DNA from: Ranitomeya imitator
Lineage: Eukaryota
Reading direction: 5' to 3'
Length of the DNA stretch: 64,000 nucleotides
Assembly: GCF_032444005.1 (NCBI RefSeq)
Contig: NC_091282.1
Location: 495,504,001 to 495,568,000, forward strand
The position numbers were made by a program, and so were the translations under genes. Every line of letters begins with the position of its first letter. The stretch's first letter is position 1. Below, piece after piece: positions 1,956 through 36,531 of the stretch. The notes beneath the pieces were generated by a model that was not told where the DNA came from, did not search any database, and worked only from the letters and a program-made list of their open reading frames with translations.

Positions 1956-4900
1956 ATGAGGAAGTCTGGTGGAAGAGGTCGTGGCCGTGGGCGTTCATTG
2001 TCAGCTGGTAATGATGGTAGTGGAGCATCAGGTGGTCGTGGGAAAAAAAATATTGCACCTAAGTCTGGAGCTGTGGAGCCAGGTTCGTCGTCTGGCTACA
2101 GAAGGCCTCGAACGCTCCCTTTTCTGGGAGTAGGAAAACCGCTTTTAAAGCCGGAGCAGCAAGAGCAAGTTTTGGCTTAACTTGCTGACTCAGCCTCTAG
2201 CTCTTTTGCCTCCTCTTTTGAAACTGGTAAATGTAAAAGCAGCGCGTCGTTAGTGGATGTTCACGGTCAGGGACAAGTCGCTTCCTTGTACTCTTCAGCA
2301 AAAACAACAACAGAGAAGGATGCAGCAGGCGACACAACGGGTTACTCCATGGAGCTCTTTACACATACCGTCCCTGGCTTAGAAAGTGAAACAGTTAACA
2401 GGCCATGCCCATTACAAGTTGAATCTGACATGGAGTGCACTGATGCACAGCCACAGCCAGACTACTATGCTGGTCCTTTGACTCAGACCATAACATTGCC
2501 CTCGCAGGGTACTGATCCAGAATCAGACCCTGATCAGACTATGTTACCCCGTCACGAACGCTCTACCACCGACTTACACGGTGACACAGACGAAGTTGCG
2601 CACGAGCTAGAAGAGGAGGTTATAGATGACCCAGTTGTTGACCCCAATTGGCAGCCATTGGGGGAACAGGGTGCAGGCGGCAGTAGTTCTGAAGCAGAGG
2701 AGGAGGAGGGGCCGCAGCAGGCATCAACATCGCAACAGGTTCCATCTGCCGGGCCCGTAGATGGGACAAAACGCGTGGCAAAGCCAAAACCTGTTGGAGG
2801 ACAGCGTATCCATCCGGTTAAAGCTCAGTCTGCAATGCCTGAAAAGGGATCCGAGGCTCGAAAGAGTGCAGTCTGGCATTTTTTGTAAACAACATCCAAT
2901 TGATCAGCGCAAAGTCATCTGTCAAAAATGTTCAACTACCTTAAGCAGAGGTCAGAATCTGAAAAGTCTCAATACAAGTTGCATGCATAGACATTTAACC
3001 ACCATGCATTTGCAAGCCTGGACGAACTACCAAACGTCCCTTAAGGTTGTAGCACCCTCGGCCAATGAAGCTAGTCAGCAACACTACATCCCTGCCGTCA
3101 CTCTAAGGCCACCATTTTCCGCACCACCTGCAGTATCTGTGCAGGTTTCTTTGCCAGGCCAAAGCAGTCAGGGTCAGGGAATCACCAGTTTTGTAGTAGG
3201 AAACACTGTATCTAGGGCACCGGCGGAAAAAATACCGTCTCCAACCGTCTCTCAGTCTGCCATGTCCACCAGCACACCCGCTAGTTCCACGATCTCCAGC
3301 TCTCCAGTCCAGCTCACCTTACATGAGACTCTGGTTAGAAAAAGGAAGTACTTATCCTCGCATCCGCGTACACAGGGTTTGAACGCCCACATAGCTGGAC
3401 TAATCTCGTTAGAGATGATGCCCTACCGGTTAGTTGAAAGCGAAGCTTTCAAATCCCTGATGGACTACGCTGAACCACGGTACGAGCTACCCAGTCGACA
3501 CTTCTTTTCGAGAAAAGCCATCCGAGCCCTCCACCAGCATGTTAAAGAGCGCATCATCCATGCACTCAGGCAATCTGTGAGTACAAAGGTGCACCTGACA
3601 ACAGATGCATGGACCAGTAGGCATGGCCAGGGACGTTACGTGTCCATCACGGCACACTGGGTGAATGTGGTGGATGCAGGGTCCACAGGGGACATCAATT
3701 TCGGGACAGTTCTGCCTAGCCCACGGTCTAGGAAACAGTTGGCTGTAGGTGTTCGCACCCCCGCCTCCTCCTCCTCGTCCTTCTGCAGAAGCGAGAGCTC
3801 GTCCACAGACCGCAGTCGCCCAACCACTCCATCCGCAGCTGCCACTGTTGCACACCAGTTGTCCCATTATGGGCCAGCTACTGGCAAGCGTCAGCAGGCT
3901 GTATTGGCTATGAAGTGTTTGGGCGACAACAGACACACCGCGGAAGTTCTGTCCGAGGTCTTGCAGAGAGAAACGCAGTCGTGGCTGGGCACAGTAGATC
4001 TTGAGGCAGGCAAGGTAGTGAGTGATAACGGAAGGAATTTCATGGCTGCCATCTCCCTTTCCCAACTGAAACACATTCCTTGCCTGGCTCACACCTTAAA
4101 CCTGGTGGTGCCGTGCTTCCTGAAAAGTTATCCGGGGTTATCCGACCTGCTCCTCAAAGTGCGCGGACTTTGCTCACATATCCGCCGTTCGTCCGTACAC
4201 TCCAGCCGTATGCAGACCTATCAGCGGTCTTTGAACCTTCCCCAGCATCGCCTAATCATAGACGTTGCAACAAGGTGGAACTCAACACTGCACATGCTTC
4301 AGAGACTGTGCGAACAGAGGCGGGCTGTTATGTTTTTGTGGGAGGATACACATACACGGGCAGGCAGTAGGATGGCAGACATGGAGTTGTCAGGTGTGCA
4401 GTGGTCGAAGATACAAGACATGTGTCAAGTCCTTCAGTGTTTTGAGGAATGCACACGGCTGGTTAGTGCAGACAACGCCATAATAAGCATGAGCATCCCC
4501 CTAATGCGTCTGCTGATGCAAAGTTTGACGCACATAAAGGAGCAGGCATCTGCAGCCGAGGAAGAGGAAAGCCTTGATGACAGTCAGCCATTGTCTGGTC
4601 AGGGCAGTGTACAGGATGAGGTAGCGGGCGAACAGGAGGAGGAGGACGAGGAGGATGATGGGGATGAGTATTTTTTTAAGGAGGAAGCTTCTCCGGGGCC
4701 ACTGGAAATTGGTGGCGTGGCAAGGCCGGGTTCTAGTTTTTTGAGGGACACAAGTGACGTAGATTTGCCTGAAACTGCCTCTCAACCAAGCACAACCGCA
4801 GATTTGACAACTGGAACTTTGGCACACATGGCGGATTATGCCTTACGTATCCTCAAAAGGGACACACGCATTACGAAAATGATGAACGATGACGATTACT

Positions 4901-5520
4901 GGTTGGCCTGCCTCCTTGGTCCTCGCTATAAAGGCAAATTGCAAAATATTATACCACATGAGAACTTGGAACTAATATTCGCAACCAAACAATCAACTCT
5001 TGTTGACCGTTTGCTTCAGGCATTCCCAGCACACAGCGCCCGTGATCGTTCTCACACGAGCTGCAGGGGGCAGCAGACCAGAAGTGTTAGAGGTGCAGAA
5101 ATCAGAAGTGGCGTTGGACAGAGGGGTTTTCTGACCAGGTTGTGGAGTGATTTTGCTATGACCGCAGACAGGACAGGTACTGCTGCATCAATTCAAAGTG
5201 ACAGGAGACAACATTTGTCCAGTATGGTTACTAACTATTTTTCATCCCTTATCGATTTTCTACCTCAACCGTCATTCCCATTTGATTACTGGGCATCCAA
5301 ATTAGACACCTGGCCAGAATTGGCAGAATATGCATTGCAGGAGCTTGCTTGCCCGGCAGCTAGTGTCCTATCAGAAAGAGTATTCAGTGCTGCAGGTTCA
5401 ATATTAACCGAAAAAAGGACTCGTCTGGCTACCCAAAATGTTGATGATCTAACCTTCATTAAAATGAACCACAACTGGATTTCGAATTCTTTTGCCCCAC
5501 CTTGCCCGGCCGACACCTAG
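1956..5520 (+). pseudogene. hAT transposase (ZBED-like), disrupted by one in-frame stop (2178-2180) and one frameshift in a T-run (~2880)
   Basis: ORFs 1956-2180 and 2253-2888 share a frame. BED finger AVWHF..VICQKC..MHRHLTTMH spans the shift. Catalytic motifs LTTDAW, VVSDNGRN, CLAH (CxxH), TRWNS and SERVFS are present, plus the hAT C-terminal dimerisation region (YW..WPELA..A..L.CPAASV.SER.FS). Confidence 0.93.
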
Positions 5521-6239
5521 CTTTCCTATGAAAAGGTCTTGCCTGTGGACTACTCTGAGTGACTTTACCAATCTCGTAATTTGCAGCAGCTGATTGTCCA
5601 GCATACGACATGTTTACACCTCCCTAAATGGCCAAACTCCCCACACGGGGCCGTGGTATAGCCACTTGGCGCAAGCACCCGTGAGAGTGCTGTTTGTCTG
5701 AAGAGGTGGGTGTGCCCACTTTTGGTCGACGGCACTGCCACTGGGTCCCTCATAGTACAATAAAGTGTCTCTGGCGGTGGTGGTGCGCACCCAACGTCAG
5801 ACACACTGTTGTAACATGAGGGGCCCTGGGCTTGTACCGCCGGCCACAAGAGAGTTCCCCCACCCCCAGCTCAAACATTGCTCTACCACTTGCACAATTA
5901 TCTCTCACAGTTCCACCAATGTTTAGTCTATGCGCTGACATCCTTAAATTCCAGCCACTGACAATACCATTGTGTTGACATGTATGATGGTACTTAACAT
6001 AATCAGGGGCCGTGTCCTATATTTACCCAAGTAAATACTTTGCGCCAAATTACTAGGTCTGAAACTACGCAGAGGAGCCCACCCCTGTACCTAATGATTG
6101 CACCCTTTTGTGTTTTCGTTTTGTTGTAATGCGAGACATTAACATGTATTTATTGTTTGGGACTACTAACTGGCAGACACTCATTACAATCGGTCTACGC
6201 TGACAACACCAATGCTGCCTGTGTACCCCTGCAAGAGAA

Positions 6240-8140
6240 TTCAAAGTGCCTACAGCCAAATTTTATTATGTTAGGCCTTCGAAGCCTGTCTGCGGTCCCT
6301 CCTTCCACTAGGCCTCCACTGACCTGTCTACTGCTGCCCGTGTGCCCCTGGAACCAATTTTAAAGTGCCTACAGCCACATTTTATTATGTTAGGCCTTCG
6401 AAGCCTGTCTGCGGTCCCTCCTTCCACTAGGCCTCCACTGACCTGTCTACTGCTGCCCGTGTGCCCCTGGAACCAATTTTAAAGTGCCTACAGCCAAATT
6501 TTATTATGTTAGGCCTTCGAAGCCTGTCTGCGGTCCCTCCTTCCACTAGGCCTCCACTGACCTGTCTACTGCTGCCCGTGTACCCCTGGAACCAATTATA
6601 AAGTGCCTACAGCCACATTATATTATGTTAGGCTTTCGAAGCCTGTCTGCAGTCCCTCCTTCCACTAGGCCTCCACTGACCTGTCTACTGCTGCCCGTGT
6701 ACCCCTGGAACCAATTATAAAGTGCCTACAGCCCAATTTTATTATGTTAGGCCTTTGAAGCCTGTCTGCGGTCCCTCCTTCCACTAGTCCTCCACTGACC
6801 AGACCACTGCTGCCCGTGTGCCCCTGGAACCTATTTTAAAGTGCCTACAGCCAAATTTTATTATGTTAGGCCTTCGAAGCCTGTCTGCGGTCCCTCCTTC
6901 CACTAGGCCTCCACTCACCTGTCTACTGCTGCCCGTGTGCCCCTGGAACCAATTTTAAAGTGCCTACAGCCATATTTTATTATGTTAGGCCTTCAAAGCC
7001 TGTCTGCGGTCCCTCCTTCCACTAGGCCTCCACTGACCTGTCTACTGCTGCCCGTGTGCCCCTGGAACCAATTTTAAAGTGCCTACAGCCACATTTTATT
7101 ATGTTAGGCCTTCGAAGCCTGTCTGCGGTCCCTCCTTCCACTAGGCCTCCACTGACCTGTCTACTGCTGCCCGTGTGCCCCTGGAACCAATTTTAAAGTG
7201 CCTACAGCCACATTTTATTATGTTAGGCCTTCGAAGCCTGTCTGCGGTCCCTCCTTCCACTAGGCCTCCACTGACCTGTCTACTGCTGCCCATGTGCCCC
7301 TGGAACCAATTTTAAAGTGCCTACAGCCACATTTTATTATGTTAGGCCTTCGAAGCCTGTCTGCGGTCCCTCCTTCCACTAGGCCTCCACTGACCTGTCT
7401 ACTGCTGCCCGTGTGCCCCTGGAACCAATTTTAAAGTGCGTACAGCCAAATTTTATTATGTTAGGCCTTCGAAGCCTGTCTGCGGTCCCTCCTTCCACTA
7501 GGCCTCCACTCACCTGTCTACTGCTGCCCGTGTGCCCCTGGAACCAATTTTAAAGTGCCTACAGCCACATTTTATTATGTTAGGCCTTCGAAGCCTGTCT
7601 GTGGTCCCTCCTTCCACTAGGCCTCCACTGTCCTGTCTACTGCTGCCCGTGTACCCCTGGAACCAATTTTAAAGTGCCTACAGCCACATTTTATTATGTT
7701 AGGCCTTCGAAGCCTGTCTGCGGTCCCTCCTTCCACTAGGCCTCCACTGACCTGTCTACTGCTGCCCGTGTACCCCTGGAACCAATTATAAAGTGCCTAC
7801 AGCCACATTTTATTATGTTAGGCTTTCGAAGCCTGTCTGCGGTCCCTCCTTCCACTAGGCCTCCACTGACCTGTCTACTGCTGCCCGTGTACCCCTGGAA
7901 CCAATTATAAAGTGCCTACAGCCCAATTTTATTATGCTAGGCCTTTGAAGCCTGTCTGCGGTCCCTCCTTCCACTAGTCCTCCACTGACCAGACCACTGC
8001 TGCCCGTGTGCCCCTGGAACCAATTTTAAAGTGCCTACATCCATATTTTATTATGTTAGGCCTTCGAAGCCTGTCTGCGGTCCCTCCTTCCACTAGGTGT
8101 CCACTGACCTGTCTACTGCTGCCTGTGTTCCCCTGTAACC
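6240..8140. repeat. 119-bp tandem satellite (~16 copies) inside the hAT
   Basis: AAAGTGCCTACAGCC...GGAACCAATTTT recurs with period 119 (e.g. 6362, 6481). Confidence 0.95.
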
Positions 8141-8329
8141 TTTTTTTAAACTGCATTGAGCCACATTTTTGTTTTAAGGCCTACTACCTGTGTCTGTCTA
8201 CGCCACTCAATACAGCTGTCCTCCTTTGAAAAAAGCTGAGCGTCAATAGTTTTGTTTTCAGCCTCTAGGAATTTGAAAACTGCATTGGGGCTACTACTTC
8301 GGTAGGGCCTACTAACGGTGTCTGCCGCT

Positions 8330-10112
8330 CCAAGGTGTTCCCCAGGTTTCCTCGCCATTGCTTCGATCTTCTGACTCTCGTTTAGTAGTTGTTGAAAACT
8401 ACACTGCATTAGGCCTACAAATTGGGTCTGGGGTGTAGAGACGGTGTGTTCCACTCCAAGGTGTTCCCCAGGTTTCCTCTCCATTGCTTCAATCTTCTGT
8501 CTCTCGTTTAGTAGTTGTTGAAAACAACACTGCATTCGGCCTACAAGTTGGGTCAGGGGTGTAGATACGGTGTGTTCCACTCCAAGGTGTTCCCCAGGTT
8601 TCCTCTCCATTGCTTCAATCTTCTGGCTCTCGTTTAGTAGTTGTTGAAAACAACACTGCATTCGGCCTACAAGTTGGGTCAGGGGTGTAGAGAAGGTGTG
8701 CTCCACTCCAAGGTGTTCCCCAGGTTGCCTCTCCATTGCTTCAATCTTAAAGCTCTTGTTTAGTAGTTGTTGAAAACAACACTGCATTCGGCCTACAAGT
8801 TGGGTCAGGGGTGTAGAGACGGTGTGTTCCACTCCAAGGTGTTCCCCAGGTTTCCTCTCCATTGCTTCAATCTTCTGGCTCTCGTTTAGTAGTTGTTGAA
8901 AACAACACTGCATTCGGCCTACAAGTTGGGTCAGGGGTGTAGAGACGGTGTGTTCCACTCCAAGGTGTTCCCCAGGTTGCCTCTCCATTGCTTCAATCTT
9001 AAAGCTCTTGTTTAGTAGTTGTTGAAATCAACACTGCATTCGGCCTACAAGTTGGGTCAGGGGTGTAGAGACGGCGTGTTCCACTCCAAGGTGTTCCCCA
9101 GGTTGCCTCTCCATTGCTTCAATCTTAAAGCTCTTGTTTAGTAGTTGTTGAAAACAACACTGCATTCGGCCTACAAGTTGGGTCTGGGGTGTAGAGACGG
9201 TGTGTTCCACTCCAAGGTGTTCCCCAGGTTGCCTCTCCATTGCTTCAATCTTAAAGCTCTTGTTTAGTAGTTGTTGAAAACAACACTGCATTCGGCCTAC
9301 AAGTTGGGTCAGGGGTGTAGAGACGGTGTGTTCCACTCCAAGGTGTTCCCCAGGTTTCCTCTCCATTGCTTCAATCTTCTGGCTCTCGTTTAGTAGTTGT
9401 TGAAAACAACACTGCATTCGGCCTACAAGTTGGGTCAGGGGTGTAGAGAAGGTGTGTTCCACTCCAAGGTGTTCTCCAGGTTGCCTCTCCATTGCTTCAA
9501 TCTTAAAGCTCTTGTTTAGTAGTTGTTGAAAACAACACTGCATTCGGCCTACAAGTTGGGTCAGGGGTGTAGAGACGGTGTGTTCCACTCCAAGGTGTTC
9601 CCCAGGTTGCCTCTCCATTGCTTCAATCTTAAAGCTCTTGTTTAGTAGTTGTTGAAATCAACACTGCATTCGGCCTACAAGTTGGGTCAGGGGTGTAGAG
9701 ACGGCGTGTTCCACTCCAAGGTGTTCCCCAGGTTGCCTCTCCATTGCTTCAATCTTAAAGCTCTTGTTTAGTAGTTGTTGAAAACAACACTGCATTCGGC
9801 CTACAAGTTGGGTCTGGGGTGTAGAGACGGTGTGTTCCACTCCAAGGTGTTCCCCAGGTTGCCTCTCCATTGCTTCGATCTTCTGGCTCTCGTTTAGTAG
9901 TTGTTGAAAACAACACTGCATTCGGCCTACAAGTTGGGTCAGGGATGTAGAGACGGTGTGTTACACTCCAAGGTGTTCCCCAGGTTGCCTCTCCATTGCT
10001 TCAATCTTAAAGCTCTTGTTTAGTAGTTGTTGAAAACAACACTGCATTCGGCCTACAAGTTGGGTCTGGGTTGTAGAGACGGTGTCTTCCGCTCCAAGGT
10101 GTTCTCCAGGTT
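8330..10112. repeat. 126-bp tandem satellite (~14 copies) inside the hAT; interrupted by the Foldback element and resuming at 20001-20140
   Basis: AAAACAACACTGCATTCGGCCTACAAG... recurs with period 126 (8521, 8647). The unit continues in register after 20000. Confidence 0.95.
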
Positions 10113-10916
10113 ACCTGTGTGAAGTTGGCACCCCATGTTCTCAAAAGATGAATAAAAATACACCATTCGTTTGTGCTGCGTTTGTGCTGGTTTGTGCCGC
10201 AAAAATGAACGTTTGTGCCGCTTTGGTTCCAGAGATATTGCGCGTTATATTTTTATGAAGCTCCACCCACTTTCCACCCCATGTTCTTAAATTTTAAAAA
10301 TGAATACACCATTCGTTTGTGCTGCGTTTGTGCTGGTTTGTGCTGCAAAAATAAACGTTTGCACCTCTTTGGTTTCCGAGATATTGTGCGCTCAATTTGC
10401 TGAAACTCCGCCCACTTTCCACCCCATGTTCTTAAATTTTAAAAATGAATACACCATTCGTTTGTGCTGCGTTTGTGCTGGTTTGTGCTGCAAAAATAAA
10501 CGTTTGCACCGCTTTGGTTTCCGAGATATTGTGCGCTCAATTTGCTGAAACTCCGCCCACTTTCCACCCCATGTTCTTAAATTTTAAAAATGAATACACC
10601 ATTCGTTTGTGCTGGTTTGTGCTGCAAAAATAAACGTTTGCACCGCTTTGGTTTCCGAGATATTGTGCGCTCAATTTGCTGAAACTTCGCCCACTTTCCA
10701 CCCCATGTTCTTAAATTTTAAAAATGAATACACCATTCGTTTGTGCTGCGTTTGTGCTGGTTTGTGCTGCAAAAATAAACGTTTGCACCGCTTTGGTGTC
10801 CGAGATATTGTGCGCTCAATTTGCTGAAACTCCGCCCACTTTCCACCCCATGTTCTTAAATTTTAAAAATGAATACACCATTCGTTTGTGCTGCGTTTGT
10901 GCTGGTTTGTGCTGCT
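10113..10916 (+). repeat. Left foldback arm: outer variant unit plus ~4.5 tandem 145-bp units (one with an internal deletion near 10610)
   Basis: Unit GAAACTCCGCCCACTTTCCACCCCATGTTCTTAAATTTTAAAAATGAATACACCATTCG...CTCAATTTGCT, period 145. Confidence 0.92.
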
Positions 10917-11311
10917 TTGGTTTTTGAAATCTCGCACTGAGTTTGTGCCTCAAATCACTGTAACTGATATATGGATAAAGGGAGATAAAAAGAAATGAAA
11001 AACACCGGCTAGCCATAGCAATTTTATAATAAAAAAAAATGTATAAATTGTTCCTTACTAGACCCCATACTTAATTTTGATTTCCTGCTTGTGATGCCCC
11101 TCCCCCACACACTGTAACTTGGGGAAAGGCCTAAGCAAATGTATGCCTAACAATTTGACTACTAGCTGAGAGACTCCCAGGGTAAATCAAGTGTACTTAC
11201 TTATTTGAACTGAAAATGTGCTAAACTGTCTTGGTAGATTTCTGCAAAGCTATTACCTGAGCAAAGAAACTTTAGTTCAATCATGGAGTTGTACTTTTAT
11301 CTGTCTACAAC

Positions 11312-11420
11312 AGTATTTCCCAAGCAGGGTGCCTGCAGGTGTTGCAAAACTACAACTCCCAGCATGACCGGAAAGTCAAAGGCTGTCCGGGTATGCTGGG
11401 GGTTGTAGTTCTCCAACACA
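11312..11420. mobile_element. Short hairpin MITE-like repeat
   Basis: AAACTACAACTCCCAGCATG ... ATGCTGGGGGTTGTAGTT inverted arms, a motif common in frog genomes. Confidence 0.55.
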
Positions 11421-11444
11421 TCAAGTTGTTTGTAATTACAGTAA

Positions 11445-11839
11445 GGGTACCGTCACACAGTGGCATTTTGATCGCTACGACGGCACGATTCGTGACGCTC
11501 CAGCATCGTAACAATATCGCTCCAGCGTCGTAGACTGCTGTCACACTTTGCAATCTACGACGCTGGAGCGATAATTTCATGACGTATGTGCGATGTAGAA
11601 GCCGTTGGTTACTATGCGCACATCGTATACGATATATATGTTACACCATGCGATCATGCCGCCACAGCGGGACACTAGACGACGAAAGAAAGTTTCAAAC
11701 GATCTGCTACGACGTACGATTCTCAGCGGGGTCCCTGATTGCAGGAGCATGTCACACACTACGATATCGTACCTATATCGCTCGAACGTCACGAATCGTG
11801 CCGTCGTAGTGATCAAAATTGCACTGTGTGACGGTACCC
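11445..11839. mobile_element. PIF/Harbinger-type MITE nested inside the Foldback element
   Basis: TIR GGGTACCGTCACACAGTG / CACTGTGTGACGGTACCC with long imperfect arms; TAA duplicated at 11442-11444 and 11840-11842. Confidence 0.85.
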
Positions 11840-12404
11840 TAATGCTTTAGCCCATTAAAAGAGTACTCTGCTGCAAAACTTATCCCCTATCCCACCCCCG
11901 GGGGGGGGGGGGGGGGGGGTTGGGTTTGGTACTGACCACTGGGCCCCCTGCAATCTCCTGCTCCCTGCAATCTCAGTGCTCCCCTGCATGGAGCAATCAC
12001 CGCTGTGTGCAGAGTGACTGCCAACCACAGGGCTTTGCTGTGGCAGGCGCGCCCCCACCATTTATTACTATGGGAGAGGCAGAGATACACAATACACTTT
12101 TCATTTGTAAAAGTAGAGAGAAGTGAGCGTGCTAAGAATAGGATTATTTAATCTCAGTACAGTGATCCCTCAACACATACAATGGCCCCAACATACGATC
12201 ATTTCAACATATGAAGGACTCTGTTGAATGCAGCATCACCTGCTGCTCCAGTATGGTTTTAACATACGATGATTCACCTGGAACTAATTACCATTGTATG
12301 TTGAGGGACCACTGTATCTTAACTATTAAAAATTATGTAATCAATTATTTTCCATATAATACACTGCATGTAAAACTAAAAAAAACATTTTTTGTTTTGA
12401 TCAG

Positions 12405-15400
12405 ATGCCCAGGAAGCCAGCCTGTGACTATGATGACATTATAAATGTCATCTGTTCTTCACATGAAAAAATTATTACAGGACAGGCAATAGCATTCCCC
12501 TCAGAAAAAGTATGGGTAGACTTGTGTCAAAAATTAAATAACAAAATTTCACCAAAAAACCTTTACACGTTTGTAAAGACAAATCGGCACAATGTATGGG
12601 AAGCCCTTGGTCTGTACAAAGATGTTACAAATATCCCAAAACAACCTTCCAACAGTGAGAGCTCAGAAGGAACAGAGAGTCATTCATCAGTTCAGTGCTA
12701 TGACATTCAGTTTGAGTTCAGTCTTTCTTTTCAGAGCTGGATCAAAATTTGGCCTGAAAAAGTAATTTACAATGACAAATCTATGTATGCTGATAAAAGA
12801 GAATACACAATCTTAAAACCTGGTACATGGACTCACATATTGAATGAGGAGATCTGGAAAAATATCAAGTCATCGTGCACACTTAAATTCAGGAGGGCAA
12901 AGGTTTATCCAAATGTTGTATCTAACTACATAGATATAACAGGGTGCTGCACAGAGTGTGATGCACAACTATCCATAAAAGTTGAAGAAATACCAGAGAT
13001 TGCTAAGCCAGTAGTGCTTAAGTGTATGATCTGCAATATTGATGACAGTCTCCACACAGGAAAATCAAAACGTAAATTATCAGGAGATTTAAGAAAAAGG
13101 TTGTCAAAAGAACTCTGGGAAGGACGAAAACAAGCACATGTATGGCGAGCAGCTGAGGCTTATAAAGTTATGGATGTTGGTGACCCTGAGCCTAGCCATC
13201 TACCAAATCTAGCAACGTTAAGAAAAGCCAAGCAAGAGATTGGCGAAAGAGAGTTAATGCACAAGGACCCAATTCTTTCATTACATCTCCTGAAATACAG
13301 TGTTCCTCAGACTGGAAGCATACACAACATTGGTCTAGATAAAAAATTTTTTGCCATTACTGGACCCCGTCTCAGATGCAAGTGTACCAAATAAAGTCAA
13401 AGAACTTGGATTCCTATGTAAGTTTTGATGCAACAGGTTCAGTAGTGAGAAAACTAAAAAGACCTGTTGGCATTTCTGGACACATCTTTTTGTACCAAGG
13501 GGTTTTGTGTTCGAGTGGAGATCATATCCCAGTAGTGCAGATGCTTTCTGAGAGCCATACTATTAATTCTATAGCGCAATGGCTGACAGAATGGAAACAA
13601 GCAGGTGCTACTGTTCCAAAGGAAGCAGTTTGTGATTTCTCCCTCGCTTTGCTTGGAGCTCTAGTTAAGGCTTTCACTCCTTACCCCGACTTGAAGACAT
13701 ATATAAATCAGTGCTTTGGAGTGTTGACCAGGAATGTTGCATCAAAACTACCACCATGCTTTATTAGAATTGATGTTGCGCACTGTATCAAGCTTATTAG
13801 CCGATGGGAATGTCTGAGGCAAGCTGGAAACAGAGTAAGGGAATTCTATCTCAGAGCAATGGCACAACTTCTACAGTCTACATCACTTGATGATGCGAGA
13901 GAACTCATTCATTCAATTTCAGTTGTTGCTTTTAGTGAATCAGAAGGGAATGATGACAGAGGCACACCAGTTTTATCAGAGACTAGCAAAGTTCAACTGA
14001 AGAGACGGATTGCAGAGGGACGTGTTTTACCCACTGTCACTGAAGATGACTATGGAGTAGAGATGAAAGAACAAGAGGATGAGCCAATTCAACCATGCCA
14101 AACAGACCTGAAAATATGGGCAACAGAAATTTGTGAAAGGAGTAAGATGCTTGCAGCAAATCATGGTGACCGAGACAATTTACATTTCCTTCCAGAACTT
14201 GTTCCAAATCTTTTAAGAATGGCATGTTACCTTCCACTTTGGACAGCCATAATGGTTCCACACTTTAAAAGTGTGAACATGACAGCAAGTTCTGCAAATG
14301 TTGAGGCTGAATTTAAGAACATAAAAAATGGACTCTTTAAACATGAATGTCTCCCTATTAGAACCGACCGATTTGTAATTCGTCACCTTGAATTTATGGA
14401 AGGCAAAATGAGACTTTCCTCAGTTCCCATAAAGAAAACCGAAAGCAGTGAAAATATGAGCCAAGACAATGGGCAAAAAAACAGCAACTGTGAGGAGGAT
14501 TCACAAGTTCACATAAAATTGGGTGATGAAAGTAGCTTGCAGGAGCAGCCTGTTGAAAATTGGAAAGGTCTCAGTAGTCCTCCAAAAAAGAGATTGTCCT
14601 ACCTAACCCCATGTTCCGAGTTGCTGCACATGGACACAAAATTTAACCGAAAAAAAAAGGTGAGCATTTTGAAAAATGGTAACCATCTAGCTAAAAAACC
14701 AATACAAGTAAACAAAAAGCTTATAAGTATCATTAATACCTGTGCATTTGATTCATTTTGCCAGTGTCTTTGTTGTGCATTCTGGGACAGTGGATTATTT
14801 TGCAATTATGTCAACAAAGAGAACACCATTGAAATTTTTGAATTGGTGCAGACAATTGTGACAAAGGGAGTTGGAAAGGAAGTTTATACAATGAGGGCTA
14901 AAATACTGTCTGGAATATTTGAATATGTTCAGCTGAAGTCAGGTGTGAGGCAGGTCAATGCTGAGTGTAATGTTGCACACATAATCTCAATGACAATGAG
15001 ACAGGTACCAAGCGTAATAATTAAAACACAGTGTTCTTCTGTGTACAGCAATAGAAATATAGCTAATTCAAGAGCAATCCCTCTTCTGCCAATCAATATA
15101 CATATTTTAGAAACTAATGGACTTGGTAAACTTCAGCTAGCATTGGAAGATGGGCTACACCTAAATGTTTCAAAATGTCTAAAGCCATTAAAGTCACCTC
15201 AAGAGTGTCCAGATGGCTTGAAAATTCAGGATGCATCTTCATTGAAATTCCTTTGCAGTGGTTCGGTCACGCACAGCTGCACCACTGGACAAGTACTTTG
15301 TATTGAAATAAGTGCAGAAACACAGTATACACTGTCCGAAATACCTGTGAACATACATCTGGACAGTCATTCATTTGTGCTACGAGGGGTTGTTGCCTTC

Positions 15401-15562
15401 ATTCCAGGAACTTGCAATATGTCTCTTGGTCATTATGTTGCCTATTGTAGAAGAAAATTTAATGGCTGGGAGAAATATGATGACCTGTGTGACTTTATTA
15501 CAACAGCCTCTGCAAAGACCAAGATACAACCCCATGTTGTGATATTTACAAAGGAGGAGTGA
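12405..15562 (+). CDS. NOF-like Mutator transposase with C-terminal USP-like (papain-fold) protease domain, ~1,050 aa; split by one frameshift at the A6T6 run 13341-13352
   Basis: ORF 12405-13394 joins ORF 13376-15562 through ..GLD(K)xFFCHYWTPSQMQVY. Putative DDE motifs: SFDATGS, VCDFSLAL, RIDVAH (D-x2-H) and SSANVEAEF. C-terminal Cys box INTCAFDS and His box GHYVAYCRR..GWEKYDD. No other stops are visible. Confidence 0.78.
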
Positions 15563-16669
15563 ATATGTGGAGAATCTGTCTCATCATGAGTCCCGTGGCA
15601 AGTCACAGGCTGCAAGATTGTTGTGGAAAGTTTAAAAGTATCCTGGCACCAAACAAAGTGTTAGTAGTGCTTTCCTCTAAGGTTGTTTTGGTGCTTAAAG
15701 TGTATGTTTAAAATAACCTAAAATATGCCTTACCAATATTTTTTTATTCTGTTAACATTTTGTTAATGTGGATTTCCCATTATGATTAAACCGTTTCATG
15801 GTTCTTTAAACAGTTCTGCTGTCTACAAAGTTTCATCTGTTATTGGTAATTCCATTTTTATCTGTGTTTGATTTGCAAAGATTTATTAAGCTCTGAAGGT
15901 CCTGTTTAGTTGGACAGCTATATTAAAATAACAATACTTTTGTTTTGAGCCAGACACAAAATCATGGTCTACCACGGTTTTGAGTCCAGCAAGAAAACCG
16001 CATATGGAGCAAAAATGAGCCAACTAGAGTCACTTGCGGACCCCCGCCAGATCATAGAAATGAATGGAGCGTATGCCCAGTATGCCCAAATGTAATGTTA
16101 ACCCAGCCATATTCACACTGCAATCCAAAGCCATCACACACAAAGTGGTGATGTCTACGGTCATTGCATATTTATGCAAAGATTTTCATAGAAGATGACA
16201 GTCACTTTACATAAACTGGCCAACGTCAAAAGTAATCACAATCTTTTTTTTTCCCTGGAATTCTTTTTATAGTGCAACGTAATTTGGCTAAACAATGTTT
16301 GCTAGGTATAATGGGCTTCAGGGCTGGTGCAAGGGTTTTTGCCACCCTAGGTGAAAGCTAATTTTGCTGCCCCTTGACCCCGCCCATTGGCTCCACCCAT
16401 TAACACGCCCTGCCTTACTACTGGGGTGAAAATAAATGAATGACTACAACCAATGGCACTCGTGCTTAGCTGTAGAGGTTATAAATCCAGGAGTAACCTG
16501 ACCTTGTTCCTCAGTGATGGTGCAAACTCTTTACTAGTCTGCGGTTCCCTCCAGGGTGAATGGTCTGGTGTCACGAATATGGTGGAAGCCGAAACTATCC
16601 CCACTCAATAGGTGAGAGTGTCAACTAATGCTGCTCAGGCAGTAACCTCGACTCTGCATAATGAAATGT

Positions 16670-18825
16670 AAACAGACATTAGCCGACACAGAATGCCGAC
16701 CCCTGGCTTATGGCATCACTATGACATCGCTGGAGGTAGCAGAGATGTATATACAGACATTAGCCCCCACAGAATGCCGACCCCTGGCTTATGACATCAC
16801 TATGACATCGCTGGAGATAGCAGAGATGTATATACAGACATTAGCCCCCACAGAATGCCGACCCCTGGCTTATGACATCACTATGACATCGCTGGAGGTA
16901 GCAGAGATGTATATACAGACATTAGCCCCCACAGAATGCCGACCCCTGGCTTATGACATCACTATGACATCGCTGGAGGTAGCAGAGATGTATATACAGA
17001 CATTAGCCCCCACAGAATGCCGACCCCTGGCTTATGACATCACTATGACATCGCTGGAGATAGCAGAGATGTATATACAGACATTAGCCCCCACAGAATG
17101 CCGACCCCTGGCTTATGACATCACTATGACATCGGTGGAGGTAGCAGAGATGTATATACAGACATTAGCCCCCACAGAATGCCGACCCCTGGCTTATGAC
17201 ATCACTATGACATCGCTGGAGATAGCAGAGATGTATATACAGACATTAGCCCCCACAGAATGCCGACCCCTGGCTTATGACATCACTATGACATCGCTGG
17301 AGATAGCAGAGATGTATATACAGACATTAGCCCCCACAGAATGCCGACCCCTGGCTTATGACATCACTATGACATCGCTGGAGGTAGCAGAGATGTATAT
17401 ACAGACATTAGCCCCCACAGAATGCCGACCCCTGGCTTATGACATCACTATGACATCGCTGGAGGTAGCAGAGATGTATATACAGACATTAGCCCCCACA
17501 GAATGCCGACCCCTGGCTTATGGCATCACTATGACATCGCTGGAGGTAGCAGAGATGTATATACAGACATTAGCCCCCACAGAATGCCGACCCCTGGCTT
17601 ATGACATCACTATGACATCGCTGGAGGTAGCAGAGATGTATATACAGACATTAGCCCCCACAGAATGCCGACCCCTGGCTTATGACATCACTATGACATC
17701 GCTGGAGGTAGCAGAGATGTATATACAGACATTAGCCCCCACAGAATGCCGACCCCTGGCTTATGACATCACTATGACATCGCTGGAGATAGCAGAGATG
17801 TATATACAGACATTAGCCCCCACAGAATGCCGACCCCTGGCTTATGGCATCACTATGACATCGCTGGAGGTAGCAGAGATGTATATACAGACATTAGCCC
17901 CCACAGAATGCCGACCCCTGGCTTATGACATCACTATGACATCGCTGGAGGTAGCAGAGATGTATATACAGACATTAGCCCCCACAGAATGCCGACCCCT
18001 GGCTTATGACATCACTATGACATCGCTGGAGGTAGCAGAGATGTATATACAGACATTAGCCCCCACAGAATGCCGACCCCTGGCTTATGACATCACTATG
18101 ACATCGCTGGAGGTAGCAGAGATGTATATACAGACATTAGCCCCCACAGAATGCCGACCCCTGGCTTATGACATCACTATGACATCGCTGGAGATAGCAG
18201 AGATGTATATACAGACATTAGCCCCCACAGAATGCCGACCCCTGGCTTATGGCATCACTATGACATCGCTGGAGGTAGCAGAGATGTATATACAGACATT
18301 AGCCCCCACAGAATGCCGACCCCTGGCTTATGACATCACTATGACATCGCTGGAGATAGCAGAGATGTATATACAGACATTAGCCCCCACAGAATGCCGA
18401 CCCCTGGCTTATGACATCACTATGACATCGCTGGAGGTAGCAGAGATGTATATACAGACATTAGCCCCCACAGAATGCCGACCCCTGGCTTATGGCATCA
18501 CTATGACATCGCTGGAGGTAGCAGAGATGTATATACAGACATTAGCCCCCACAGAATGCCGACCCCTGGCTTATGACATCACTATGACATCGCTGGAGGT
18601 AGCAGAGATGTATATACAGACATTAGCCCCCACAGAATGCCGACCCCTGGCTTATGACATCACTATGACATCGCTGGAGGCGGAGTTACAACTCAGGTAG
18701 CAGAGATGTACATACAGACATTAGCCCCCACAGAATGCCGACCCCTGGCTTATGACATCACTATGACATCGCTGGAGGCGGAGTTACAACTCGGGTAGCA
18801 GAGATGTACATACAGACATTACCTC
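16670..18825. repeat. 81-bp minisatellite (~26 copies) abutting the right foldback arm; open in one frame (27-aa repeat ORF 16661-18700)
   Basis: GCAGAGATGTATATACAGACATTAGCCCCCACAG...CGCTGGAGGTA, period 81 (16741, 16822). Confidence 0.95.
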
Positions 18826-18833
18826 CTCTGCCA

Positions 18834-20000
18834 GGAGTTTCAGCAAATTGAGCGCACAACATCTCGGAAACCAAAGCGGTGCAAACGTTTATTTTTGCAG
18901 CACAAACCAGCACAAACGCAGCACAAACGAATGGTGTATTCATTTTTAAAATTTAAGAACATGGGGTGGAAAGTGGGCGGAGTTTCAGCAAATTGAGCGC
19001 ACAACATCTCGGAAACCAAGGCGGTGCAAACGTTTATTTTTGCAGCACAAACCAGCACAAACGCAGCACAAACGAATGGTGTATTCATTTTTAAAATTTA
19101 AGAACATGGGGTGGAAAGTGGGCGGAGTTTCAGCAAATTGAGCGCACAATATCTCGGAAACCAAAGCGGTGCAAACGTTTATTTTTGCAGCACAAACCAG
19201 CACAAACGCAGCACAAACGAATGGTGTATTCATTTTTAAAATTTAAGAACATGGGGTGGAAAGTGGGCGGAGTTTCAGCAAATTGAGCGCACAATATCTC
19301 GGAAACCAAAGCGGTGCAAACGTTTATTTTTGCAGCACAAACCAGCACAAACGCAGCACAAACGAATGGTGTATTCATTTTTAAAATTTAAGAACATGGG
19401 GTGGAAAGTGGGCGGAGTTTCAGCAAATTGAGCGCACAACATCTCGGAAACCAAAGCGGTGCAAACGTTTATTTTTGCAGCACAAACCAGCACAAACGCA
19501 GCACAAACGAATGGTGTATTCATTTTTAAAATTTAAGAACATGGGGTGGAAAGTGGGCGGAGTTTCAGCAAATTGAGCGCACAATATCTCGGAAACCAAA
19601 GCGGTGCAAACGTTTATTTTTGCAGCACAAACCAGCACAAACGCAGCACAAACGAATGGTGTATTCATTTTTAAAATTTAAGAACATGGGGTGGAAAGTG
19701 GGCGGAGTTTCAGCAAATTGAGCGCACAATATCTCGGAAACCAAAGCGGTGCAAACGTTTATTTTTGCAGCACAAACCAGCACAAACGCAGCACAAACGA
19801 ATGGTGTATTCATTTTTAAAATTTAAGAACATGGGGTGGAAAGTGGGTGGAGCTTCATAAAAATATAACGCGCAATATCTCTGGAACCAAAGCGGCACAA
19901 ACGTTCATTTTTGCGGCACAAACCAGCACAAACGCAGCACAAACGAATGGTGTATTTTTATTCATCTTTTGAGAACATGGGGTGCCAACTTCACACAGGT
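18834..20000 (-). repeat. Right foldback arm: ~8 tandem 145-bp units inverted relative to the left arm
   Basis: Reverse complement of the left-arm unit; six-frame ORFs recur every 145 bp on the - strand. Confidence 0.93.
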
Positions 20001-21432
20001 CTCCAGGTTTCCTCTCCATAGCTTCAATCTTCATGCTCGTCTTAAGTAGTTGTTGAAACAACACTACATTAGGCCTACAAGTTGGGTCTGGGTCGTAGAG
20101 ACGTTGTCTGCCGCTCCAAGGTGTTCTCCAGGTTGCCACTTAATCGAAGCTGCATAGAGCTTATTTTGTAATTTTACGCCTACAAAGTCTTTCTGCGGTC
20201 CCTCCTTCCAATTGTCCTCCACTGAGCACAACAATGCAGAACGTGTACCCATGTAACCTTTTTTAAACCAGCGTCGAGCCAACTTTGTGGTTTAAGGCCT
20301 ACTTGTAGTGTCTGGCTGCGCCACTCAATACAGCTGTCCTCTTTACAAAAAATGACCTACAATTATCTGGTTTTCAGCCTATCCGGATTTTAAAACTGCA
20401 GTGGGCCTACTAGTTGGGTTGGGGCCTTCTATCTGTGTCTGCCGCTCCTTGCTGTTCTCCTACAGTGAACAAAGCTGTGCCGCCTGTTTACTACTCCTGC
20501 CAATTTTGAACTGCATTTAGACTACTTACAGATTTGGGCCTACTCTCTGTGTCAGCCTCTCATTCCAGTTGTCCTCCACTGAACAAAACAATGCCCCCTG
20601 GTTAGTCCTGTTACCAATTTTGAACTGCATTTAGCCCACTTTAGTCTTTGGGCCTATATCTGTGTTTCCTCCTCATCCTGCCCATTGCCCAGCCAGTGAT
20701 AGATGAGTCTGCTGGTACATTGACCCATAACGCAACATTCCCCGTGCACGCTACACTGCAAGATTGTGACCCTGCTGAAAGTCAGGTCCCCCTTCCCGCA
20801 TACCATACCACCTTACGCGGGGACAAAGAGGAAGGTGCAGATGAAGGTGCAGGTTCCTTCATCAGGTGGGGGGAGGAATACTCGTTGGCGACGTCACTGG
20901 CACAGGGCCCCTCATAGTACGCAAAAGTGTTGCTGCCGGAGGGAGGCGCCCCCGCCGTGCAAACACACCGCTGTATTTTGAGGGGCCCTGTGCCAGTGCC
21001 AATGCCAACGAGGGGGCCCCCCCTGCTTGCTCAGGATCACAGCACTTGCAAAGTTGAAATACTTACCTCTCCCTGCTCCACTGCCGTGACGTGGTCCAGA
21101 TGTCCTGGGCCCACTAATTGCTTGAACCAGCCCTACCCCCCACAACTTTAGCCAAATGACCCCCAATTTCAAATGCCTTACAATTATTATAAGCTAAATT
21201 ACGATTGACAAGCTTCAGTAGCAAGAATGGATGTTTTTGCCAATACAATGGGCTCTGTACATGTTTTCCTGGCCTCTACACACTGCCGACTATGCTCCCC
21301 CATTGACTTGCATTGGGTTTTGTGTTTCGGTCGATCCCCGACTTTTCGCGATAATCGGCCGATTCCACTCGACTCGACTTTTGAGATAGTCGGGTTTCGC
21401 GAAACCCGGCTCGACTCTAAAAAGGTCAAGGT

Positions 21433-34984: not shown

Positions 34985-36531
34985 CTTTGTCTGACTGTCT
35001 GGGGCTGTGGCAATGCTGGAGACCATGGGGCAGATTGCTGGACACACTGGGGCAGTACTGGAGACCATGGGGCAGAATGCTGGACACACTGGGGCAATAC
35101 AGGAGACCCTGGGGCAGATTGCTGGACACACTGGGGCAATACTGGAGACCCTGGGGCAGATTTCTGGACACATTGAGGCAATGCTGGAGACCCTGGGGCA
35201 GACTTCTGGGCAGATTGCTGGACACACTGGGGGTAATATACTGGGGGTAATATACTGGACACACTGGGGCAATGCTGGACACTGGGGGTAATATGCTGGA
35301 CACACTGGGGCAGACTGCTGGACACACTGGGGAAAGGCTGGACACTGAGGGCAGATTGCTGGACACACTGGGGGTAATATGCTGGACATACTGGGGCAGA
35401 TTGCTGGACACACTGGGGGTAATATGCTGGACACACTGGGGCAGATTGCTGGACAACATGGGGGTAATATGCTGGACACACTGGGGCAGATTGCTGGACA
35501 ACATGGGGGTAATATGCTGGACACACTGGGGGCAGGACTTGAGGCATGGGCAGAATGTAGATACGGGGCATGATTGGAGACACGGGGCAGGATTGGATCA
35601 TGGGGCAGGACGGATACGATGGAGGCTGGTGGGGCAGGATGGGGAGATCATATGGGGTAGAATGGATACTCATGAGGGCAGGATACGACAACATATGGCT
35701 GGAGCCAGGAATGAGATAAACAGGGCCAGGGTGGGGAATATTATTACCATAGGGGATAATTAAGGGATATTGTTACTGCAGTGATGTATTCATTTTATTT
35801 TTTGAGTATACTGTTTTAAATGGGGGGGCGGTCCTGTTACTGTGCAGAGTGACACTATATCACCTTTTTTTCTTCATGTGGTGTAATGTAGAAGTTGTGA
35901 AAAATTAAGTAATGTGTTCTGCAAGCGGAGCTCGAGATAACTGTTATTTCCTGCAGAAACGAGTCCTGGCTGGAAGGAATGATGGCGGTCTGTGCTGGAT
36001 GAAAGATGAAGGACTTCACCTAGAGACGTCACTGGTGAGTCAGTGTTACCTATACACTGACACTATACACTGTATACTATATAGAGGTCCTGTGTATAAT
36101 GTCACCAGTGATCTCTGTATTACCTCTACACAGACACTGCATACTAAGTACAGATCTCCTGTGAATACTGGCACTTATGGTGATAGTATTGTGGTTTTTT
36201 TTTTTATTACTGATCAGTATTGTAGTATTCAGTCACTATGTGGTGGTAATATGTGGTCTGGAAATGGTGCGGTGGTATTTGTCCCTTGTATGTAGTATTA
36301 TTCGGTCACTATGTGGCCTGGTCATGGTGTGGTGGTATTAAGTCACAGGTGTGGCATGTGGGGGTGACACCATTAGGCCCAGTTTAAGTTCTACAAAACA
36401 GGAAAACCATTTTTGGTAACCTTTGTGTGTATTGAGCTGGGGGGGGGATGGGGGGATGGGGGGATGGGGGAGGGGGGGGGCGCCAAACTCGGGATCAGCC
36501 CCGGGCGGCAAAAGCTCTAGCTACGCCTCTG
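34557..36531. mobile_element. hAT-type non-autonomous element in PLIN2 intron 2, with an internal minisatellite (~35000-35530)
   Basis: TIR CAGTGGCGTAG / CTACGCCTCTG; perfect 8-bp TSD CAGGATCT (34549-34556, 36532-36539). Confidence 0.92.

What the first reader, a model, noticed from the sequence alone, without database searches (positions are those of the whole stretch)
10113..20000. Complete Foldback/NOF-like Mutator transposon in a vertebrate (frog-like) genome
Seen in sequence: exact terminal inversion, a perfect 9-bp TSD (CTCCAGGTT), arms of unequal length (~0.8 vs ~1.17 kb) built from tandem 145-bp units, and a ~1,050-aa internal gene. Established: long tandem-repeat TIRs of unequal length, 9-bp TSDs and a ~120-kDa internal NOF protein define the Drosophila FB-NOF element, and repeat classifications place NOF in the Mutator superfamily. 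Inference: the motifs SFDATGS / VCDFSLAL / RIDVAH / SSANVEAEF supply the D, D, D-x2-H and E signature and, from memory, resemble NOF-like proteins. This would be an almost autonomous Foldback-type element carrying its own transposase, a group described mainly from invertebrates. I cannot tell whether this family is already catalogued.
Basis: partly seen in the sequence, partly recalled or inferred. Interest (0 to 1): 0.88.

Follow-up and report, generated by a model that had tools for sequence, protein, structure and literature searches.

The report
Frog-like NOF-type Foldback (Mutator) transposon
This is a young, complete 9.9-kb "foldback" jumping gene in a frog-like genome that carries its own transposase, a clear relative of the fruit-fly NOF protein, showing that this Mutator-type group is present and probably recently mobile in vertebrates.

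Summary
Window 10113-20000 is a 9,888-bp insertion in a 126-bp satellite. It has a perfect 9-bp target-site duplication and exactly inverted ends. Its two arms are unequal (803 and 1,167 bp) and are built from 145-bp tandem units.

The internal gene is split in this copy (329 + 728 codons) by a frameshift in an A6T6 run. Contigs of public DNA runs from three coded organisms carry an in-frame form of 1,051 codons.

A confident structure model has Drosophila NOF (P16320) as its best match over its whole length (E 1e-51 to 1e-53, 27-31% identity). The next matches are all of the Mutator/IS256 lineage: FAR1/FRS, K. lactis alpha3, ZSWIM and Pfam MULE clusters. The C-terminal 300 residues form a USP-type deubiquitinase fold with conserved Cys/His/Asp, as in NOF.

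Four related elements from other assemblies group with fish proteins. They share the layout, the termini and an arm-specific GTTTGTGC motif, and one of them has a perfect 9-bp duplication.

The kind is known: RepeatMasker has a class MULE-NOF, listed for zebrafish, and fish proteins are auto-named NOF-FB. This is therefore a new, unusually clean member, not a new class. The same window's USP-like domain was also noted by the scan (s1-294825).

The parts
8315..10112 (.). Host 126-bp satellite array, left of the insertion. It resumes at 20010.
   Evidence: TRF gives 14.3 copies at 95%. The 9-mer site recurs every 126 bp.
10104..10112 (+). Left copy of the 9-bp target-site duplication CTCCAGGTT
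10113..10134 (+). Left terminus ACCTGTGTGAAGTTGGCACCCC. It is conserved as ACCT(C/G)(C/T)GTGAAGTTGGC.CCCC in four related elements.
10113..10915 (+). Left inverted arm: a terminal unit plus 5.5 tandem 145-bp units. It carries 18 copies of GTTTGTGC in + orientation (a 19th lies just inside, at 10941).
10916..12404 (+). 5' internal non-coding spacer. It contains a small inverted-repeat structure at 11444-11840.
12405..13394 (+). ORF1 (329 aa): the N-terminal third of the transposase. A helical N-terminus is followed by a beta-rich Cys-rich domain (about 12700-13075; W142, C158, C181/C182, C185, H217). This domain superposes on the DNA-binding part of MULE/FLYWCH/FAR1 proteins in the homologue model.
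13341..13352 (+). Frameshift site: an A6T6 run. Contigs of DNA runs X1, X4 and X10 have two letters fewer and A13346T, which puts ORF1 and ORF2 in one frame, as in the homologues.
13376..14425 (+). RNase H-like DDE catalytic core, at the start of ORF2. D18 is at 13427-13429, D87 at 13634-13636, D133-x2-H136 at 13772-13783 and E310 at 14303-14305. An all-helical insertion lies between beta5 and the E helix.
14663..15562 (+). C-terminal USP-type (peptidase C19) domain. The Cys box is NTC at 14735-14743 (C456). The His box is GHY (H686, 15431-15433). The Asp is in YDD (15476-15484). The stop codon is at 15560-15562.
15563..16671 (+). 3' internal non-coding spacer
16672..18821 (.). Internal tandem array: an 81-bp unit, about 25 copies, 98% alike, with a 98-bp variant at its end. 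The 679-aa ORF in it is an artefact of the 27-codon period.
18834..20000 (-). Right inverted arm: 7.9 tandem 145-bp units plus the terminal unit. It carries 25 copies of GTTTGTGC in - orientation.
20001..20009 (+). Right copy of the 9-bp target-site duplication CTCCAGGTT

Best explanation
This is a cut-and-paste DNA transposon of the NOF (Foldback) branch of the Mutator superfamily. It inserted recently into a 126-bp satellite.

Its single intronless gene encodes a protein of about 1,051 aa with three parts: (i) an N-terminal helical region plus a Cys-rich beta domain resembling the WRKY/FLYWCH-type DNA-binding domain of MULE transposases; (ii) an RNase H-like DDE core (D..D..D-x2-H..E) with a helical insertion; and (iii) a C-terminal USP-type cysteine peptidase domain.

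Shown here: the anatomy, the 9-bp duplication, homology to Drosophila NOF over the full length, Mutator/IS256-lineage proteins as the next-nearest folds, and conservation of the termini and of an arm-restricted GTTTGTGC motif across elements whose transposases are only 43-56% identical.

Inferred: the transposase binds the many GTTTGTGC sites in the 145-bp arm units, pairs the ACCTGTGTGAAGTTGGC termini, cuts with the DDE site, and integrates with a 9-bp stagger. Unequal crossing-over among the units makes the arms differ in length.

This copy is disabled by a frameshift in an A6T6 run, or that run is mis-assembled. In-frame copies exist in reads from three coded organisms, so the family is probably autonomous and recently, perhaps still, active. 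The role of the USP domain is unknown. Its conserved catalytic triad suggests a real deubiquitinase-type activity that serves transposition.
For: Structure and TSD.

Gene continuity with full-length homologues. The in-frame 1,051-codon form in run contigs.

NOF homology: Foldseek against Swiss-Prot models puts P16320 first with E 1.4e-51 (window ORF2 2-728 against NOF 319-1056, 27% identity). It is first again with E 8.7e-54 (homologue P0004 1-665 against NOF 1-663, 31% identity). Sources name relatives 'NOF-FB transposable element'.

Mutator lineage: the next Swiss-Prot matches are K. lactis alpha3, FRS11/5/10/7/6/4, FHY3, FAR1, ZSWIM3/1 and IS256-family transposases. ESM Atlas shape matches with TM 0.45-0.51 over about 400 residues go to clusters carrying Pfam MULE, FLYWCH, SWIM, ZSWIM1-3_RNaseH-like and DBD_Tnp_Mut. 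ISCth4 (IS256 family) is among the best PDB matches. Pfam MULE is the only family hit by more than one of 47 members, but only weakly.

Catalytic residues are invariant.

USP domain.

Cognate arms: four other complete elements share the layout, the termini and the arm-only motif.

Youth: there is 1 mismatch in the outer 502 nt of the arms and the TSD is perfect. The gene is also held in contigs of RNA-labelled runs.
Against: No Pfam transposase model reaches significance on the window's ORFs. MULE reaches only E 0.03 in 4 of 47 relatives. Placement in Mutator therefore rests on predicted-structure ranking and TSD length. TM-scores to solved transposases are low, 0.2-0.35.

Only 2 of 5 complete elements have a perfect 9-bp TSD.

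This copy is frameshifted. The in-frame form is read from Logan contigs, which collapse copies and may be chimeric. For X1 it is pieced together from two overlapping contigs.

No binding, excision or insertion polymorphism was tested. Presence in RNA libraries does not prove transcription.

For Drosophila, a paper I could see only as a citation calls FB-NOF non-autonomous (Badal et al. 2013, cited in PMC4079207).
Confidence: 0.88

Rival explanations
1. Composite element: the foldback arms are a non-autonomous vehicle mobilised by some other transposase. The NOF-like gene would be a passenger or nested unit that does not act on these ends, as has been argued for Drosophila FB-NOF.
For: [quoted passage not shown] No biochemical link between protein and arms was tested here. 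This copy's gene is broken.
Against: Five elements from different assemblies keep the same gene between the same kind of arms. Their termini and arm motif are conserved while the proteins have diverged to 43-56% identity. No separate inverted repeats or TSD bound the gene inside the arms. The 9-bp TSD fits a Mutator-type enzyme.
Confidence: 0.07
2. A foldback-shaped element of another superfamily (P-like as in Galileo, or hAT), with the NOF resemblance superficial.
For: P element transposase is formally the top PDB match (E 2.8e-5), and Hermes, Transib and RAG1 also appear. The D-x2-H motif is shared by several superfamilies (my recollection of Yuan and Wessler 2011).
Against: NOF matches at E 1e-51 to 1e-53 over the full length. 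All next-best Swiss-Prot and Atlas matches are of the MULE/IS256 lineage, and none is hAT or P. The TSD is 9 bp, not 7-8. No THAP, BED or hAT-dimerisation domain was found.
Confidence: 0.02
3. Assembly artefact: an inverted duplication created by chimeric long reads around a single-copy gene, not a mobile element.
For: Long inverted tandem-repeat arms are hard to assemble.
Against: The arms are unequal, the termini are precise, and a 9-bp duplication restores the satellite register. The same architecture is found in four independent assemblies. The gene is held by runs of at least six coded organisms at high word depth.
Confidence: 0.02

Closest known systems
Drosophila melanogaster FB-NOF (FB4) and its 120.7-kDa NOF protein (UniProt P16320)
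   Same: The protein is homologous over its full length, about 1,050 aa: N-terminal region, DDE core and C-terminal USP-like domain. Both have long inverted arms made of tandem repeats. Both have 9-bp TSDs (for FB this is from established knowledge).
   Different: Identity is only 27-31%. Here the arm units are 145 bp, whereas my recollection is that FB has 10/20/31-bp repeats. No separate inverted repeats bound the gene within the arms, whereas NOF is recalled to have its own ~300-bp repeats. There is an extra internal 81-bp array. The host is a vertebrate.
Fish NOF-like elements (loci L001-L004; proteins named 'NOF-FB transposable element' in Clarias, Triplophysa and others; RepeatMasker class MULE-NOF in zebrafish)
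   Same: The layout is the same. The termini are ACCT..GTGAAGTTGGC. The arm units are ~133-145 bp with the same GTTTGTGC motif. One has a 9-bp TSD (L003). The protein architecture is the same. They form the neighbouring clade in the tree.
   Different: Protein identity is 43-56%. They are shorter (5.6-7.5 kb) and lack the 81-bp array. The window's protein sits in a separate sub-clade with unnamed database proteins (P0001 at 70%).
Mutator-like elements (MuDR/MULE, FLYWCH-bearing animal MULEs) and their domesticated or prokaryotic kin (FAR1/FHY3/FRS, ZSWIM1/3, K. lactis alpha3, the IS256 family including ISCth4)
   Same: These are the next-nearest predicted folds for the DNA-binding domain plus DDE core. 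The TSD is ~9 bp. The TIRs are long.
   Different: Pfam MULE/Transposase_mut models do not reach threshold. No SWIM finger was detected. A USP domain is appended.
Foldback-shaped elements with other or unknown transposases (Galileo, P superfamily; Tetris of D. virilis)
   Same: The TIRs carry internal tandem repeats that may multiply transposase-binding sites. They are associated with satellite DNA (PMC4079207).
   Different: Galileo's enzyme is P-like with a THAP domain. Tetris has no known transposase. Here the enzyme is NOF-type.
Peptidase-carrying Mutator relatives (plant KI-MULEs with ULP1, from memory; an ESM Atlas chordate cluster auto-named NOF-FB in which 45% of members carry Peptidase_C48)
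   Same: A cysteine peptidase of the ubiquitin-like-modifier system is fused or linked to a Mutator-type transposase.
   Different: Here the peptidase is USP (C19), not ULP1 (C48).

Membership tests
NOF family (Foldback transposase-like proteins) | Protein homologous to Drosophila NOF P16320 over its whole length | tested here: met
   Foldseek against Swiss-Prot models puts NOF first. E 1.4e-51 for window ORF2 2-728 against NOF 319-1056 (27% identity). E 8.7e-54 for homologue P0004 1-665 against NOF 1-663 (31% identity). ORF1 aligns with the N-terminus of P0004 at 46-53% identity.
NOF family (Foldback transposase-like proteins) | C-terminal USP-like domain with Cys and His boxes | tested here: met
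   The USP fold is matched at probability 1.0. The profile hits USP8/Ubp8 at E 2e-9. C456 is conserved in 55/56 sequences, H686 in 52/56 and D703 in 50/56. The NOF alignment runs to residue 1056.
Foldback-type element | Long inverted arms built of tandem repeats, often unequal in length | tested here: met
   The arms are 803 and 1,167 bp, with 5.5 and 7.9 units of 145 bp.
Foldback-type element | 9-bp target-site duplication | tested here: met
   The window has a perfect 9/9, verified against the satellite register. L003 is 9/9, L004 6/9, L001 5/9 and L002 4/9.
Mutator superfamily | RNase H-like DDE core whose nearest relatives are MULE/IS256 transposases | tested here: met
   The test was by predicted structure only. 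Matches are alpha3, FRS/FHY3/FAR1, ZSWIM and the IS256 family, Pfam-MULE clusters at TM ~0.5 and ISCth4 in the PDB. The secondary-structure order is b1-b2-b3-a1-b4-a2-b5, then a helical insert, then the E helix.
Mutator superfamily | Significant match to the Pfam MULE (PF10551) or Transposase_mut sequence models | tested here: inconclusive
   The window ORFs give no hit. MULE is hit by 4 of 47 relatives, best E 0.03, below threshold. One Atlas feature hit goes to a MULE cluster at 0.87.
Mutator superfamily | N-terminal WRKY/GCM1-type (FLYWCH/FAR1-like) zinc-finger DNA-binding domain | tested here: inconclusive
   A beta-rich domain has nearly invariant W and three Cys. Structural alignments to FRS and to MULE+FLYWCH clusters start at residues ~77-105 and so include it. 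The domain was not searched on its own.
Autonomous element | Uninterrupted transposase ORF | tested here: not met
   The window copy is frameshifted at the A6T6 run 13341-13352. The family as a whole does have the feature: contigs of X1, X4 and X10 read as one 1,051-codon frame.
Active element | Excision, new insertions, or insertion polymorphism | not testable with these tools
   Only indirect signs of youth are available: a perfect TSD and 1 mismatch in 502 nt of the arms.

The most novel reading that the evidence does not exclude
The family is still transposing in this amphibian lineage. NOF-type proteins would then be the long-sought Foldback transposases, recognising the GTTTGTGC arm repeats. 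Their built-in USP domain would be an active deubiquitinase (or ubiquitin-like-modifier peptidase) needed for transposition. That would be a transposase with an integral DUB activity, in a vertebrate-adapted Mutator element.
Probability: 0.2. Interest if true: 0.8.

Novelty: new member of a known kind. Interest (0 to 1): 0.52.

Why it matters
There are three reasons.

(1) A broad survey of Mutator elements could not confirm any MULE in vertebrates. [quoted passage not shown] A complete, nearly undamaged Mutator-superfamily element with in-frame copies in reads bears directly on that question.

(2) How Foldback elements move, and whether NOF is their transposase, has stayed unsettled since the 1980s. 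Here the gene, the termini and a repeated arm motif are conserved together across frog-like and fish elements. That gives concrete substrates for a binding and excision assay.

(3) The USP-type domain, conserved with its catalytic triad from Drosophila NOF to vertebrates, is a testable and little-discussed feature of a transposase.

Tried and rejected
- Pfam scans of the window ORFs gave no transposase family, only a weak UCH hit.
- The 679-aa ORF at 16661-18700 was rejected as a gene: it is a 27-codon tandem repeat.
- Searching the whole ORF2 model against the PDB was swamped by USP hits. I therefore modelled the N-terminus plus core of a 54%-identical natural homologue (P0004 1-670), because the window's frame break forbids a single reference.
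- Fetching P0002's 33-kb contig returned no DNA, and P0006 was not on record.
- TSDs of L001 and L002 are not clean (5/9 and 4/9). I did not force them.
- No internal inverted repeats bound the gene, unlike what I recall for Drosophila NOF.
- Synonymous and non-synonymous counts between the window copy and the run variants (1:4, 5:8, 8:14) are too few to show selection.
- Copy number cannot be derived from the word depths (100-390), because run coverage is unknown.
- Literature searches found no paper on a USP domain in Mutator/NOF transposases, and no amphibian MULE-NOF description.
- The scan's notes hold no other copy of this element by words.


Full report
**Observation**

The region 10113-20000 is bounded by exact inverted ends. 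The 29-mer starting ACCTGTGTGAAGTTGGC occurs only at 10113-10141 (+) and 19972-20000 (-), with none expected by chance. The outer 502 nt of the two arms differ at a single base.

Both arms are arrays of a 145-bp unit. The left arm has 5.5 units (10129-10915) and the right arm has 7.9 units (18834-19984), so the arms measure 803 and 1,167 bp.

The 9-mer CTCCAGGTT flanks the element on both sides. The host DNA is a 126-bp satellite (8315-10116, resuming after 20000). This 9-mer site occurs once per unit in 15 consecutive units. Deleting the element plus one 9-mer restores a normal unit: 113/126 identical to its neighbour, against 106/126 if both copies are kept. The duplication is therefore real and not a chance repeat.

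**The gene**

Two ORFs, 12405-13394 (329 aa) and 13376-15562 (728 aa), lie in different frames. Together they align end to end with database proteins of 1,010-1,107 aa. The shared start is MPR(K/P)P and the shared C-terminus is ...TKE.

The break lies in an A6T6 run at 13341-13352. I laid Logan contigs of four public runs on 12300-15700. The three DNA-labelled runs (X1, X4, X10, from three coded organisms) carry two letters fewer at 13341 plus A13346T. Applying only the differences listed for each run gives one open frame of 1,051 codons ending at the same stop.

The window's copy therefore has either a private frameshift or a homopolymer assembly error, and the family has in-frame copies. Contigs collapse copies, and X1's stretch comes from two overlapping contigs, so this shows that the in-frame form exists, not how many intact copies there are.

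Runs of at least six coded organisms hold 64-93% of the gene's 31-mers. Several of these runs are labelled RNA. That is compatible with transcription but does not prove it.

**What the protein is**

Pfam gives no transposase hit on the window ORFs. An exhaustive HMMER search finds a large family: 2,620 cluster representatives at E<=1e-3, many of about 1,000-1,100 aa matching the whole query. A word-indexed search returns relatives that their sources name 'NOF-FB transposable element' or '120.7 kDa protein in NOF-FB transposable element', in fishes and insects.

In a 56-sequence alignment, D18, D87, R131, D133 and H136 are invariant and E310 is present in 55 of 56 (ORF2 numbering). The Cys box N454-T455-C456 and H686 are nearly invariant.

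An AlphaFold model of ORF2 has pLDDT 87.8. It shows the RNase H order b1(D18)-b2-b3-a1-b4(D87)-a2-b5, then D133-x2-H136, a helical insertion, and E310 on a helix. A disordered linker follows, and then a mixed alpha/beta domain.

Against Swiss-Prot models the top match is Drosophila NOF P16320, residues 319-1056. The E-value is 1.4e-51 with 27% identity, covering query residues 2-728. All other matches are USP deubiquitinases aligned to residues ~430-728. Solved USP structures match in the same way. The family profile hits USP8/Ubp8 by sequence at E 2e-9.

The frame break forbids one reference for the whole protein. I therefore modelled residues 1-670 of the natural homologue P0004 (54% identical), with the window's two pieces included in the alignment. 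The model has pLDDT 89.4. Its top Swiss-Prot match is again NOF, residues 1-663, at E 8.7e-54 and 31% identity.

The following matches are K. lactis alpha3, eleven FAR1/FHY3/FRS proteins, ZSWIM3/1 and IS256-family transposases. No hAT, P, piggyBac or Tc1 protein appears among the 30 matches listed. A shape search of the ESM Atlas gives a chordate cluster auto-named NOF-FB. It then gives clusters carrying Pfam MULE, FLYWCH, SWIM, ZSWIM1-3_RNaseH-like and DBD_Tnp_Mut, at TM about 0.45-0.51 over roughly 400 residues starting near residue 100. These alignments therefore include the Cys-rich beta domain.

In the PDB the best matches are DDE transposases: P element, ISCth4 of the IS256 family, Transib, RAG1 and Hermes. 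Their TM-scores are low. At the sequence level, Pfam MULE is the only family hit by more than one relative (4 of 47), but only at E 0.03.

I conclude that membership of the NOF family is demonstrated. Placement in the Mutator superfamily is well supported by structure and TSD length but not by a significant sequence-model match.

**Are the arms and the gene cognate?**

I fetched four related loci from NCBI assemblies (L001-L004). Their transposases are 43-56% identical to the window's. Each has the gene between inverted arms of ~133-145-bp tandem units. Each ends in ACCT(C/G)(C/T)GTGAAGTTGGC.CCCC, close to the window's terminus.

L003 has a perfect 9-bp TSD (CAAAAACAC). L004 has 6/9, L001 5/9 and L002 4/9.

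The octamer GTTTGTGC occurs 18 times in the window's left arm (+), with a 19th just inside at 10941. It occurs 25 times in the right arm (-) and once elsewhere in the 64 kb. In L001-L004 it occurs 9-20 times per arm, mirror-oriented, and almost never outside the arms.

A motif kept in the arms while the proteins diverged by about half is the obvious candidate for the transposase-binding site. This is an inference. The co-conservation argues against the rival view that the gene is a passenger in a foreign foldback vehicle. No separate repeats or TSD bound the gene inside the arms.

**Phylogenetic position**

A quick maximum-likelihood tree of 39 proteins pairs the window's ORF2 with the unnamed P0001 (70% identical, support 100), and then with P0002-P0004 (support 98). 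This group sits beside a clade (support 100) of six of the seven named fish proteins and the four assembly loci. One of those loci nearly coincides with a Leuciscus protein. The seventh named fish protein, from Triplophysa, sits on a very long branch, and its placement at the base of this vertebrate-associated side is unreliable. All 11 insect-named proteins fall on the other side of one branch (support 80).

There is thus no sign of recent transfer from invertebrates. Transfers among vertebrates cannot be judged without organism names.

**Known or new?**

RepeatMasker's class MULE-NOF is tabulated for zebrafish (1,159 copies; PMC4746887). It also appears in a few other genome papers. Fish proteins are auto-named after NOF. 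The kind is therefore known.

On the other hand, the main survey of Mutator elements could not validate any vertebrate MULE. It asks whether they are really absent from vertebrates and does not mention NOF or Foldback (PMC6446971). A Drosophila paper that I could see only as a citation calls FB-NOF non-autonomous. I found no paper on a USP domain in these transposases and none describing an amphibian NOF-type element.

My verdict is a new, unusually clean and young member of a known kind. It has practical value as a model for Foldback transposition.

**Limits**

The organism is coded. Copy number, activity, DNA binding and peptidase activity are untested. The arms were not checked against reads. 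The structure-based inferences rest on predicted models on both sides.

Noticed in passing
window 2761-5520 (+): An uninterrupted 919-aa ORF with a BED zinc finger (E 4e-5) and a hAT C-terminal dimerisation domain (E 2e-11). It is an apparently intact hAT transposase gene just upstream of the satellite block. Tandem repeats lie at 856-1724 on its other side.
   Followed up: partly
window 6213-8169 and 8315-10116 / 20010-20150: Two adjacent satellites, with 119-bp and 126-bp units at 95% unit identity. The NOF-type element sits in the second one. The 126-bp array seems to end about one unit after the insertion.
   Followed up: partly
window 16672-18821: A very homogeneous (98%) 81-bp x ~25 array inside the element, next to the right arm. 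It is absent from the shorter related elements L001-L004. Its origin and role are unknown. It may be a case of a foldback element nursing a satellite.
   Followed up: no
window 11444-11840: A small inverted-repeat structure (61-nt arms, 92% complementary, 275 nt apart) in the 5' spacer of the element. It may be a nested miniature element or a regulatory hairpin.
   Followed up: no
window 41033-43124 (+): Reverse-transcriptase (RVT_1, E 4e-19) and RT-RNase H fragments, i.e. a retroelement remnant.
   Followed up: no
window 27851-29490 and 35005-35532: Long degenerate minisatellites with 27/57-bp and 22/45-bp units. They produce long spurious ORFs on the minus strand.
   Followed up: no
ESM Atlas cluster (row 1); Swiss-Prot Q4W4Y0 / Q4KL13: A chordate cluster auto-named NOF-FB carries Peptidase_C48 (45% of members) and PHD (34%) instead of USP. 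This suggests NOF-type transposases swapped their peptidase module. Separately, mammalian 'dopamine receptor-interacting protein 1' (310 aa) is the best non-NOF match to the USP-like domain (TM by hit 0.63-0.64, 13-14% identity). Whether it derives from a transposon is unknown.
   Followed up: no
L004 1-7000 and 14500-22118; L001-L003 flanks: The related fish-type elements lie among retroelement genes (RVT_1, rve, RT_RNaseH). L002 lies near a PRY/SPRY gene fragment. These are ordinary repeat-rich surroundings.
   Followed up: no
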